From positions 12,474,464-12,538,463 of the forward strand of contig NC_043011.1 of NCBI RefSeq assembly GCF_006345805.1: DNA of 64,000 nucleotides. Reading direction: 5' to 3'. The DNA comes from Octopus sinensis. Taxonomy: Eukaryota. The translations under genes were made by a program, and so were the position numbers. The notes below the pieces were generated by a model that was not told where the DNA came from, ran no database searches, and was given only the letters and a program-made list of their open reading frames with translations. The number at the start of each line of letters is the position of its first letter. Within the stretch, counting starts at the first letter, position 1. This document shows, piece after piece, positions 41,699-42,008 of the stretch.

Positions 41699-42008
41699 AC
41701 AACTTATAAACAAGGGCAAAAGAAAAAAAATTCTAATGCCAAATAGGCCGAAAACAGACACATCGTCAATAACCATATAATTCATCACTATAAGCATGCA
41801 TCTCGAAGAAAGCCGACAGAAATTACTAAAAAATTCTGTTATCATATCGGATCCGATTTCAGAGTTAATTCATAAGAACCTTCTCTTCATCAGTGATAAA
41901 TGCGACAAAGAAATAAATGAAATACCTACTTATACCCATGACGATGTGTCTGTTTTTGGCATATTTGAAATTAGAAATTTTTTTCTTTTGCCCTTGTTTA
42001 TAAGTTGT
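41699..42008. repeat. Fold-back element, about 70-bp arms, intact hammerhead in the spacer
   Basis: Arms 41699-41768 and 41939-42008; (TA)n on both sides. Confidence 0.8.
41839..41899 (-). ncRNA. Type I hammerhead ribozyme, canonical core
   Basis: Minus strand TTATCA-CTGATGA-AGAG AA GGTTC TTAT GAATT AA CTCT-GAAA-TCG GATC CGA-TA-TGATAA. Perfect 6-bp stem I, extended stem II, palindromic stem III, AUA cleavage triplet. Confidence 0.85.

What the first reader, a model, noticed from the sequence alone, without database searches (positions are those of the whole stretch)
41839..41899. Fully canonical hammerhead sense to the PDE4 pre-mRNA, 6.4 kb upstream of the UCR1 exon
Seen: every core nucleotide is intact (CUGAUGA, GAAA, AUA), with a perfect 6-bp stem I, a bulged 9-bp stem II and a 3-bp stem III with a GAUC loop, so it could fold as a monomer. 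Predicted cut is between 41845 and 41844. It lies in the spacer of a 70-bp inverted repeat bracketed by (TA)n. Established: PDE4/dunce is a core cAMP learning and memory gene, and intronic self-cleaving ribozymes are known in other animal genes (for example the HDV-like CPEB3 ribozyme). Inference: it could modulate splicing or yield of PKA-regulated long PDE4 isoforms, or it may simply be a young TE copy.
Basis: partly seen in the sequence, partly recalled or inferred. Interest (0 to 1): 0.8.

Follow-up and report, generated by a model that had tools for sequence, protein, structure and literature searches.

The report
Transposon-borne hammerhead motif in octopus PDE4 intron
A real hammerhead self-cleaving RNA motif lies, in the sense direction, in a huge intron of the Octopus vulgaris PDE4 gene, but it sits inside a small foldback repeat inserted in a TA microsatellite and looks like the ribozymes carried by animal retrozyme/Penelope-type mobile elements, so it is most likely an ordinary transposon passenger, not a regulator of PDE4.

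Summary
On the minus strand, 41899->41839 reads UUAUCA-CUGAUGA-[26-nt helix II]-GAA-AUCGGAUCCGAU-A|UGAUAA. This is a type I hammerhead layout with an intact core, and the cut falls between 41845 and 41844. It is sense to a PDE4 UCR1 exon (35393->35216) 6.4 kb downstream, and it lies in an annotated ~488-kb gene span of Octopus vulgaris.

The motif is not chance: 0 of 300 and 0 of 200 shuffled windows gave such a motif. A second dimer-type hammerhead lies at 63974->63932.

"Fully canonical" and "folds as a monomer" are overstated:
- The 10.1-11.1 pair is A-U, not G-C.
- No Rfam hammerhead model matches, even at E<=10.
- The hammerhead fold is about 0.1% of the predicted ensemble.
- Helix III is a 12-nt perfect palindrome, the hallmark of mobile-element hammerheads.

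The motif sits in a 332-bp element with 30% GC and 81-nt inverted arms. The whole insert, about 385 bp, splits a (TA)n(CA)n microsatellite. Size, GC, self-pairing and target all match mollusc retrozymes and Penelope-like fragments.

Arm divergence suggests an age of about 16 My. Neutral survival of an intact motif over that time is 15-22%, so intactness is no evidence of selection.

I could not test copy number or orthologous conservation, because no octopus genome was searchable. Verdict: a new member of a known kind, of low interest.

The parts
41839..41899 (-). Type I hammerhead motif. Stem I 5' strand 41899-41894; core CUGAUGA 41893-41887; helix II 41886-41861; GAA 41860-41858; helix III palindrome AUCGGAUCCGAU 41857-41846; H17 (A) 41845; stem I 3' strand 41844-41839. 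The predicted cut is between 41845 and 41844.
   Evidence: Sequence read. Descriptor scans (0 hits in shuffles). Folding.
41688..41768 (.). Left arm of the inverted repeat. On the minus-strand RNA this is the 3' arm.
   Evidence: (81 nt, 89% complementary) and the alignment.
41939..42019 (.). Right arm of the inverted repeat. On the minus-strand RNA this is the 5' arm.
   Evidence: In the whole-element fold the arms form one long stem, -128.4 kcal/mol.
41624..41687 (.). Unique 'tail' between the left (TA)26 and the left arm. It probably belongs to the inserted unit, which would then be about 385 bp (41624-42008). It is unrelated to the body of the element.
   Evidence: local alignment no better than shuffles. 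PLE insertions often carry a 30-40-bp tail (PMC8557442).
41573..41623 (.). (TA)26 microsatellite, the left flank of the insertion.
42009..42075 (.). (TA)7(CA)n compound microsatellite, the right flank. It overlaps the last 11 nt of the right arm as the repeat finder called it. Joined to the left flank it gives a continuous (TA)n(CA)n, which is the putative empty site.
35216..35393 (-). PDE4 UCR1 exon (FDVENG...[19 protein letters not shown]...IASEL), with an AG acceptor and a GTAAGT donor. It is context only, not part of the element.
   Evidence: (tblastn E 8e-19), and (100% identity to the O. vulgaris model P0001).

Best explanation
The motif is the ribozyme of a solitary copy of a small non-autonomous mobile element. 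The element is of the hammerhead-bearing kind known from animals: a non-LTR retrozyme, or a fragment of the terminal repeat of a Penelope-like element (PLE). It inserted into a (TA)n(CA)n microsatellite inside the giant 5' intron of Octopus vulgaris PDE4.

In the life cycle of such elements, tandem or multimeric transcripts are cut at each hammerhead. Two neighbouring ribozymes often pair their palindromic helix III segments into one long helix. The ~170-400-nt monomers are then circularised and reverse-transcribed by PLE enzymes.

Here only one unit is present, so no partner ribozyme is nearby. The isolated RNA is predicted to prefer a competing fold, in which CUGAU pairs with AUCGG. After transcription the 81-nt arms will close into a long hairpin. 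I therefore expect weak or no self-cleavage in the PDE4 pre-mRNA and no selected host function.

Shown: the motif, its orientation, its intronic position, the foldback element and the microsatellite flanks. Inferred: the retroelement origin, the low activity and the lack of function.
For: 1. Hammerhead layout with an intact core and a 12-nt perfect palindrome as helix III. A short helix III with a palindromic loop is the stated hallmark of metazoan type I and PLE hammerheads (PMC4209133).
2. The unit is 332 bp between arm ends, about 385 bp between the microsatellite flanks, and 29.8% GC. It is strongly self-paired, -128.4 kcal/mol. Metazoan retrozymes are 170-400 nt, under 45% GC and highly self-paired. 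Mussel units are 350-390 bp, and their hammerheads lack the classical loop-loop contacts and cleave at about 0.1 per min (PMC7229834).
3. Inverted, 5'-truncated copies and insertion into microsatellites are described for PLEs. (TA)n is the target named for the Naiad clade, which itself lacks canonical hammerheads (PMC8557442).
4. A second, different dimer-type hammerhead lies at 63974->63932 (Rfam Hammerhead_1 17.8 bits, E 0.028). This gives two in 64 kb against 0.017 expected, so such motifs appear to be scattered in this genome.
5. The O. vulgaris genome has 30 recently active Penelope families (PMC13282606). The giant squid assembly has 235 Rfam Hammerhead_1 loci (PMC6962438).
6. In Xenopus, 42-44% of retrozyme sequences are intronic, and monomers are dispersed evenly (bioRxiv 10.64898/2026.07.22.740005).
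7. Folding gives the hammerhead fold -10.1 kcal/mol against an MFE of -13.8. About 0.1% of the ensemble has all three helices. The homodimer, with a 12-bp helix III, is -37.0 against 2 x -13.8.
8. The arms differ by 11%, a JC distance of 0.059 per arm, about 16 My on the published octopus TE clock. Neutral survival of the motif over that time is 15-22%.
Against: - No second copy of the element was found. There is none in the window, none through ORF look-ups and none in JGI metagenome contigs. No octopus genome could be searched, so the repeat-family status is inferred, not shown.
- The unit is not in tandem, which is the defining arrangement of retrozymes.
- No PLE reverse transcriptase or endonuclease ORF is nearby.
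- The hammerhead lies in the unique spacer, not in the arms. In a comparator locus, L001, both inverted arms carry one.
- Helix III here is 4 bp plus a tetraloop. That is longer than in amphibian dimer-only ribozymes, and invertebrate retrozyme hammerheads of that type do cleave as monomers in vitro (PMC7761336). The prediction of low activity could therefore be wrong.
- Nearest-neighbour folding ignores tertiary contacts.
Confidence: 0.6

Rival explanations
1. Exapted regulatory ribozyme. The hammerhead cleaves nascent PDE4 pre-mRNA before the UCR1 acceptor 6.4 kb downstream is spliced. It thereby lowers the yield of long, PKA-regulated isoforms, by analogy with the CPEB3 HDV-like ribozyme and the amniote intronic hammerheads.
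For: - Sense orientation inside the intron of the annotated model.
- Intact core and helices.
- Helix III of 4 bp plus a tetraloop could allow monomer cleavage, as in invertebrate retrozyme hammerheads (PMC7761336).
- There is a precedent that an intronic ribozyme tunes expression of a memory gene through kinetic competition with splicing (PMC10919898, abstract seen).
Against: - There is no conservation evidence at all, because it could not be tested.
- The motif sits in a transposon-like foldback in a microsatellite.
- Its intact state is unremarkable under neutrality, 15-22%, and it was picked out because it is intact.
- The predicted active fold is a 0.1% conformer.
- The 10.1-11.1 pair is A-U.
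- There is no match to the Rfam intronic hammerhead families HH9 and HH10.
- Retrozyme sequences are depleted from introns relative to intergenic DNA in Xenopus, which suggests they are mildly harmful there, not useful (bioRxiv 10.64898/2026.07.22.740005).
Confidence: 0.06
2. DNA-transposon derivative (a MITE or foldback element) that happens to carry a hammerhead in its internal region. It would be mobilised by a transposase acting on the 71-81-nt terminal inverted repeats, not by reverse transcription.
For: - Long terminal inverted repeats with a short unique interior, 332 bp in total.
- AT-rich sequence and TA-rich target.
- Other foldbacks lie nearby in the same intron.
- Tc1/mariner remnants are in the window.
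- 65 MITE families and many Tc1-mariner families are reported for O. vulgaris (PMC13282606).
Against: - No clear target-site duplication can be read, because the flanks are TA repeats and a 64-nt unmatched tail separates the left arm from the (TA)n.
- The papers read here describe animal hammerheads in retroelements (PLEs, retrozymes and others), not in MITEs (PMC4209133, PMC7761336).
- The arms are only 89% alike.
Confidence: 0.17
3. A chance match to the hammerhead consensus in AT-rich intronic DNA, with no ribozyme ancestry.
For: - No Rfam hammerhead model reports it, even at E<=10 in a 75-nt search.
- The minimum-free-energy fold is not the hammerhead fold, and its z-score is only -2.2.
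Against: - 0 of 300 shuffled windows gave a motif with stems of at least 6/4/4 bp. 0 of 200 gave any motif with a palindromic helix III.
- A 12-nt perfect palindrome sits exactly at the helix III position.
- A second such motif lies in the same window.
Confidence: 0.02
4. An intronic box C/D snoRNA: a terminal stem, with UGAUGA as box C and CUGA as box D.
For: Weak cmscan alignments to C/D families across exactly 41839-41899: snoZ169 at 16.1 bits and SNORD36 at 14.1 bits. It is also sense and intronic.
Against: - The scores are far below the gathering thresholds (55 and 30 bits), with E about 1-5.
- The CUGA is 15 nt away from the terminal stem instead of adjoining it.
- There are no C'/D' boxes.
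- Every position is accounted for by the hammerhead layout.
Confidence: 0.01

Closest known systems
Metazoan non-LTR retrozymes (Cervera & de la Pena 2020, PMC7229834), especially the Mytilus units
   Same: - Type I hammerhead.
- Unit length: 332-385 bp here, 350-390 bp in mussel.
- Low GC: 30% here, under 45% in retrozymes.
- Strongly self-paired RNA.
- The host is a mollusc.
- The mussel ribozymes also lack the classical loop 1-loop 2 contact nucleotides.
   Different: - A single unit, not a tandem array.
- A very regular 81-nt inverted repeat, not a viroid-like imperfect rod.
- Helix II is unusually long: 26 nt, 9 bp with an internal loop.
- The 10.1-11.1 pair is A-U.
- Family copies and circular RNA have not been shown.
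Minimal hammerheads of Penelope-like elements (Cervera & de la Pena 2014, PMC4209133; PLE structure in PMC8557442)
   Same: - Palindromic helix III that allows a two-ribozyme dimer.
- A helix II longer than usual.
- Mostly found as dispersed single motifs from truncated copies.
- Inverted 5'-truncated arrangements.
- Microsatellite targets.
- PLEs are active in O. vulgaris (PMC13282606).
   Different: - No PLE ORF or pseudo-LTR could be linked to it.
- Helix III is longer (4 bp plus a tetraloop) than in the minimal variants.
- Stem I is the canonical 6 bp, not 4-5 bp.
- The G10.1-C11.1 pair directly after the core is absent, unless the A and U next to the core are read as unpaired.
Conserved intronic ribozymes of vertebrates (hammerheads HH9 and HH10; the CPEB3 HDV-like ribozyme, PMC10919898)
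   Same: A sense-strand self-cleaving motif inside a large intron of a gene with neuronal functions. Those ribozymes are also thought to derive from retroelements (PMC7761336).
   Different: - Those are defined by deep conservation at an orthologous site and by demonstrated cleavage. Neither is shown here.
- There is no Rfam match to those families.
- This one still sits in a recognisable mobile-element shell.
Hammerhead viroids and viroid-like satellite RNAs
   Same: A rod-forming RNA of about 330 nt that carries a hammerhead, whose weak helix III favours cleavage in multimers.
   Different: - This is a genomic DNA copy.
- It has a hammerhead in one polarity only.
- There is no evidence of a replicating RNA.

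Membership tests
Hammerhead ribozyme, type I | Conserved core: C3 U4 G5 A6 N7 G8 A9, G12 A13 A14, the A15.1-U16.1 pair, and H17 not G | tested here: met
   CUGAUGA, GAA, an A...U pair closing helix III, and A17, read and required by the descriptor.
Hammerhead ribozyme, type I | Three helices around the core, with the open end at helix I | tested here: met
   Stem I 6 bp, helix II 4+5 bp, helix III 4 bp plus a GAUC loop. 0 of 300 shuffles matched.
Hammerhead ribozyme, type I | G10.1-C11.1 pair next to the core (highly conserved but not absolute) | tested here: not met
   The pair next to the core is A-U. G-C is the second pair.
Hammerhead ribozyme, type I | Score at or above the Rfam gathering threshold for a hammerhead covariance model | tested here: not met
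   No hammerhead family was reported at the gathering score, nor at E<=10 on 311 nt or 75 nt. The long helix II and the helix III insert probably cost the score. The second motif at 63976-63930 reaches 17.8 bits against a threshold of 34.
Hammerhead ribozyme, type I | Site-specific self-cleavage | not testable with these tools
   This needs a transcription and cleavage assay. Folding predicts that the active fold is about 0.1% of the ensemble, and that the dimer is favoured by about 9 kcal/mol.
Metazoan non-LTR retrozyme | Tandem repeats, each unit carrying a type I hammerhead | tested here: not met
   There is a single unit and no other copy in the 64-kb window. Dispersed monomers are, however, described as common derivatives (bioRxiv 10.64898/2026.07.22.740005).
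Metazoan non-LTR retrozyme | Unit of about 170-400 bp, GC below 45%, RNA highly self-paired | tested here: met
   332 bp (about 385 bp with the tail), GC 29.8%, MFE -128.4 kcal/mol for 346 nt.
Metazoan non-LTR retrozyme | [quoted passage not shown] | not testable with these tools
   No octopus genome or transcriptome was searchable. The indirect searches were empty.
Penelope-like element terminal repeat | Hammerhead located in the pseudo-LTR next to a reverse transcriptase / GIY-YIG ORF | tested here: not met
   None of the 22 ORFs of at least 110 aa lies within 3.6 kb of the motif. Ten non-repetitive ones across the window were scanned against Pfam, and only a mariner transposase was recognised. 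Most PLE hammerheads are reported as orphan motifs from truncated copies (PMC4209133), so this does not exclude a PLE origin.
Penelope-like element terminal repeat | Palindromic helix III / loop 3, inverted truncated copies, microsatellite target | tested here: met
   A 12-nt palindrome, 81-nt inverted arms, and flanks that join to (TA)n(CA)n.
Conserved (exapted) intronic ribozyme | Presence at the orthologous intron position across species, with constrained evolution | not testable with these tools
   Only the O. vulgaris model was retrievable, and its span is too long to fetch. No other cephalopod locus was obtained.
MITE | Terminal inverted repeats plus a target-site duplication, and many copies | tested here: inconclusive
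   Inverted repeats are present. A TSD cannot be read in the TA-repeat flanks, and a 64-nt unmatched tail lies on one side. Copy number is untestable.
Box C/D snoRNA | Boxes C and D brought together by an adjoining terminal stem, with an Rfam family score | tested here: not met
   The best scores are 16.1 bits against a threshold of 55, and 14.1 against 30. CUGA lies 15 nt from the terminal stem.

The most novel reading that the evidence does not exclude
The mobile-element hammerhead has been co-opted. It cleaves nascent PDE4 pre-mRNA in octopus neurons in competition with splicing to the UCR1 exon 6.4 kb downstream, and so sets the level of long, PKA-regulated PDE4 isoforms. That would be an invertebrate, hammerhead-based counterpart of the CPEB3 ribozyme in a cAMP learning gene. 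A second sense hammerhead 22 kb further upstream in the same intron would add to the effect.
Probability: 0.05. Interest if true: 0.75.

Novelty: new member of a known kind. Interest (0 to 1): 0.2.

Why it matters
If it is a transposon passenger, as I conclude, it adds one data point: hammerhead-bearing, retrozyme-like elements exist in octopus and land in neuronal gene introns. In the papers I could search, cephalopod hammerheads appear only as a count from routine Rfam annotation of the giant squid (PMC6962438). No octopus retrozyme family is described there. This copy also escapes the Rfam models, so such counts are probably too low.

It would matter much more if the copy were active and conserved. 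A sense ribozyme in a ~488-kb gene span of a cAMP phosphodiesterase would give a directly testable link between RNA self-cleavage and isoform output in a learning pathway. The present evidence gives no reason to expect that.

Tried and rejected
1. Rfam. There were no hits at the gathering threshold in the whole window. There was no hammerhead hit for the flagged motif at E<=10 on 311 nt or 75 nt. The only hits were C/D snoRNA noise, which I rejected.
2. Other copies in the window. blastn with word size 9 found only the element's own inverted arms and TA-repeat matches. A relaxed scan allowing one core mismatch found no decayed hammerheads beyond the two already known. An earlier version of that script did not return.
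3. Other copies via spurious ORFs. A two-sequence profile of the ORFs that cross the arms and the ribozyme found nothing among 5.8 billion proteins.
4. Metagenome contigs. The hammerhead pattern gave 0 hits. An 18-nt arm pattern gave one contig, L004, which shares only 19 nt and is a chance match.
5. Orthologous loci. The UCR1 peptide found only one cephalopod protein, the O. vulgaris model, whose span is too long for DNA retrieval.
6. Sampling octopus DNA through homologues of the window's mariner. The three long ENA contigs fetched (L001-L003) share only the mariner with the window, so they are probably not octopus. One of them did give a comparator pair of inverted hammerheads.
7. A palindrome through the whole element, centred on GGATCC. 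The interior between the arms is not significantly self-complementary; 90 of 1000 shuffles scored as well.
8. Terminal redundancy, which would indicate a more-than-unit copy from a circular template. There is none.
9. A PLE endonuclease next to the L001 hammerheads. I recalled a resemblance, but Pfam found nothing, so this remains unverified.
10. tRNA-derived SINE heads near the element. There are none.

Full report
**What is there**

The minus strand from 41899 to 41839 reads UUAUCA CUGAUGA AGAGAAGGUUCUUAUGAAUUAACUCU GAA AUCGGAUCCGAU A UGAUAA. This is the layout of a type I hammerhead:
- a 6-bp stem I that is open at its outer end;
- the CUGAUGA box;
- a 26-nt helix II, with 4 bp, a 2x2 A/A internal loop, 5 bp (two of them G-U) and a UUAU loop;
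- GAA;
- a helix III made of the A15.1-U16.1 pair plus UCG/CGA, closed by GAUC;
- then A17 and the 3' strand of stem I.

I wrote a descriptor that asks for the core and the three helices.
- It finds this motif and one other in the window.
- 300 first-order Markov shuffles of the window gave 0.017 loose matches per window, and none as good as this one.
- When helix III must be a perfect palindrome, the two motifs remain, and 200 shuffles gave none.

The motif is therefore real and not a chance match.

**Where 'fully canonical' goes too far**

- The pair next to the core (10.1-11.1) is A-U, not the highly conserved G-C (conservation per PMC4209133).
- No Rfam hammerhead model reports the motif, whether at the gathering score in the whole window or at E<=10 in 311-nt and 75-nt searches. 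The only alignments there are insignificant box C/D snoRNA matches (16 bits against thresholds of 30-55). They arise from UGAUGA and CUGA. I reject them because the CUGA is 15 nt from the terminal stem.
- Nearest-neighbour folding does not give the hammerhead fold. The MFE is -13.8 kcal/mol, with CUGAU paired to AUCGG, while the hammerhead fold is -10.1. About 0.1% of the ensemble has all three helices.
- Two copies would form a double hammerhead with a 12-bp helix III at -37.0 kcal/mol, against 2 x -13.8.

The 12-nt perfect palindrome AUCGGAUCCGAU is the feature that published work describes for metazoan type I and Penelope-element hammerheads. Many of those work as dimers in tandem transcripts (PMC4209133, PMC7761336).

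A caveat cuts the other way. Invertebrate retrozyme hammerheads with a helix III of a few pairs and a tetraloop do cleave as monomers in vitro, at 0.1-0.8 per min (PMC7229834, PMC7761336). Folding programs also ignore tertiary contacts. Monomer activity is therefore not excluded.

**Gene context**

- The exon has a polypyrimidine tract with an AG acceptor just before 35393, and a GTAAGT donor after 35216.
- Its peptide is 100% identical to an 88-residue protein model of Octopus vulgaris on an 84-Mb chromosome of GCA_951406725.2.
- That model spans 487,659 nt, and its first 29 residues are not encoded in the window.

The hammerhead is therefore sense to PDE4, 6,446 nt upstream of the UCR1 acceptor, and inside an annotated giant intron.

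**The shell around the ribozyme**

- The motif lies in the 170-nt spacer of an inverted repeat with 81-nt arms, 89% complementary (41688-41768 and 41939-42019).
- The interior is not significantly palindromic.
- The 332-bp unit has 29.8% GC. As RNA it folds into one long hairpin of -128.4 kcal/mol.
- To the right the arm runs straight into (TA)7(CA)n. To the left a 64-nt unrelated tail separates the arm from (TA)26.
- Joined, the two flanks make a continuous compound microsatellite of a type seen elsewhere in the window. About 385 bp therefore look like an insertion into (TA)n(CA)n.
- No other copy lies in the window.

**Comparison with known elements**

Metazoan non-LTR retrozymes are 170-400-nt, low-GC, highly self-paired units that carry a type I hammerhead. 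In the mussel they are 350-390 bp, and their ribozymes lack the classical loop-loop contacts (PMC7229834). A 2026 preprint derives retrozymes from the terminal repeats of Penelope-like elements. It finds dispersed monomers to be common, with 42-44% of copies in introns in Xenopus (bioRxiv 10.64898/2026.07.22.740005).

Penelope-like elements often carry an inverted 5'-truncated copy that creates inverted repeats. They also often have a 30-40-bp tail and insert into microsatellites; (TA)n is named for the Naiad clade, which itself lacks canonical hammerheads (PMC8557442). Most of their hammerheads are found as orphan single motifs, sometimes as pairs on opposite strands (PMC4209133).

O. vulgaris has 30 recently active Penelope families (PMC13282606). 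The giant squid assembly has 235 Rfam hammerhead loci (PMC6962438).

The present element matches these descriptions in size, composition, self-pairing, ribozyme type and target. It fails the tandem-array criterion, and no Penelope ORF is nearby.

A second hammerhead lies on the same strand at 63974-63932. It has a different sequence, a 10-nt palindromic helix III and an Rfam Hammerhead_1 score of 17.8 bits. It shows that such motifs are scattered in this region.

An unrelated ENA contig, fetched by accident (L001), shows the arrangement with identical hammerheads in both inverted arms. That differs from the octopus copy, where only the spacer carries one.

**Is its intact state evidence of selection?**

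If the arms were identical at insertion, 11% divergence gives a Jukes-Cantor distance of 0.059 per arm. The published octopus clock sets a distance of 0.09 at about 25 My (PMC13282606), which puts the insertion at roughly 16 My. Simulating substitutions at that level leaves the core and minimal stems intact in 22% of trials, and all observed stems intact in 15%. The motif was also noticed because it is intact. So there is no signal of constraint.

**How it most likely works**

I conclude that this is a solitary copy of a hammerhead-bearing non-autonomous retroelement (confidence 0.6). In the element's own cycle, the ribozyme trims multimeric transcripts to unit length, probably through a dimeric helix III. 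Here, alone in a pre-mRNA, it should be weak or inactive.

If it does cleave at a rate like the mussel ribozyme (0.1 per min), some nascent transcripts would be cut before the acceptor 6.4 kb downstream is reached. That is the kinetic logic shown for the Cpeb3 ribozyme (PMC10919898). I give this regulatory reading about 6%.

The other rivals are:
- a MITE-type DNA element that carries a hammerhead (about 17%);
- a chance match (2%);
- a C/D snoRNA (1%).

**What could not be done**

No cephalopod genome or transcriptome is among the searchable collections. The following attempts all failed or were uninformative:
- reaching other copies through spurious ORFs;
- metagenome scans;
- the PDE4 exon;
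- the window's mariner transposase.

The two decisive tests therefore remain open: the copy number and family of the 385-bp insert in octopod genomes, and its presence or absence at the orthologous intron.

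Noticed in passing
window 63932-63974 (minus strand; Rfam alignment 63930-63976): A second hammerhead motif: UUGA CUGAAGA GAC-ACACGCAA-GUU GAA ACACUAGUGU C UCAA. It has a 10-nt palindromic helix III and scores 17.8 bits on Rfam Hammerhead_1 (threshold 34, E 0.028 in a 71-nt search). It is sense to PDE4 in the same intron, 28.5 kb upstream of the UCR1 exon and 26 nt from the window end. 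Its flanks are unrelated to the first element.
   Followed up: partly
window 39500-39670: A near-perfect hairpin with 70-nt arms, 99% complementary, and a 31-nt loop. Two further foldbacks lie at 40338-40601 (123-nt arms, 73%) and 40825-40969 (63-nt arms, 79%). The intron is rich in foldback or MITE-like sequences that would form long double-stranded RNA in the pre-mRNA. Such RNA is a possible ADAR or small-RNA substrate.
   Followed up: no
window 19230-20524 (ORF 19507-20202, minus strand): A mariner remnant (Pfam Transposase_1, E 1.5e-24). It is 90-94% identical in DNA to copies on three ENA contigs that share nothing else with the window. The highest-ranking hit that carries an organism name is from the mantis shrimp Oratosquilla (86% identity). 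This pattern would fit horizontal transfer among marine invertebrates.
   Followed up: partly
L001 12391-12438 (minus) and 12887-12934 (plus): An unidentified ENA contig (ERZ25067889) carries two identical minimal hammerheads on opposite strands. Each has a bulged U after A9, a G10.1-C11.1 pair and an ACAUGU palindrome. They sit in the arms of an inverted repeat around an 87-residue ORF. I recalled a resemblance between that ORF and a Penelope endonuclease C-terminus, but Pfam found nothing.
   Followed up: partly
window 8442-8819, 17585-18145 and 56341-56712; also 11324-11665 and 61654-62037: Two sets of ORFs share long peptide strings (for example [13 protein letters not shown]..., and DLA.FLQLD.LPN.N). 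These are copies of two interspersed repeat families, probably SINE-like. They fit the 66% repeat content reported for O. vulgaris.
   Followed up: no
window 27097-27759 (plus strand): A 220-residue ORF that looks like the C-terminal part of a LINE reverse-transcriptase protein (my recollection). It has no Pfam match. It lies in the GC-richer stretch around 24-32 kb.
   Followed up: no
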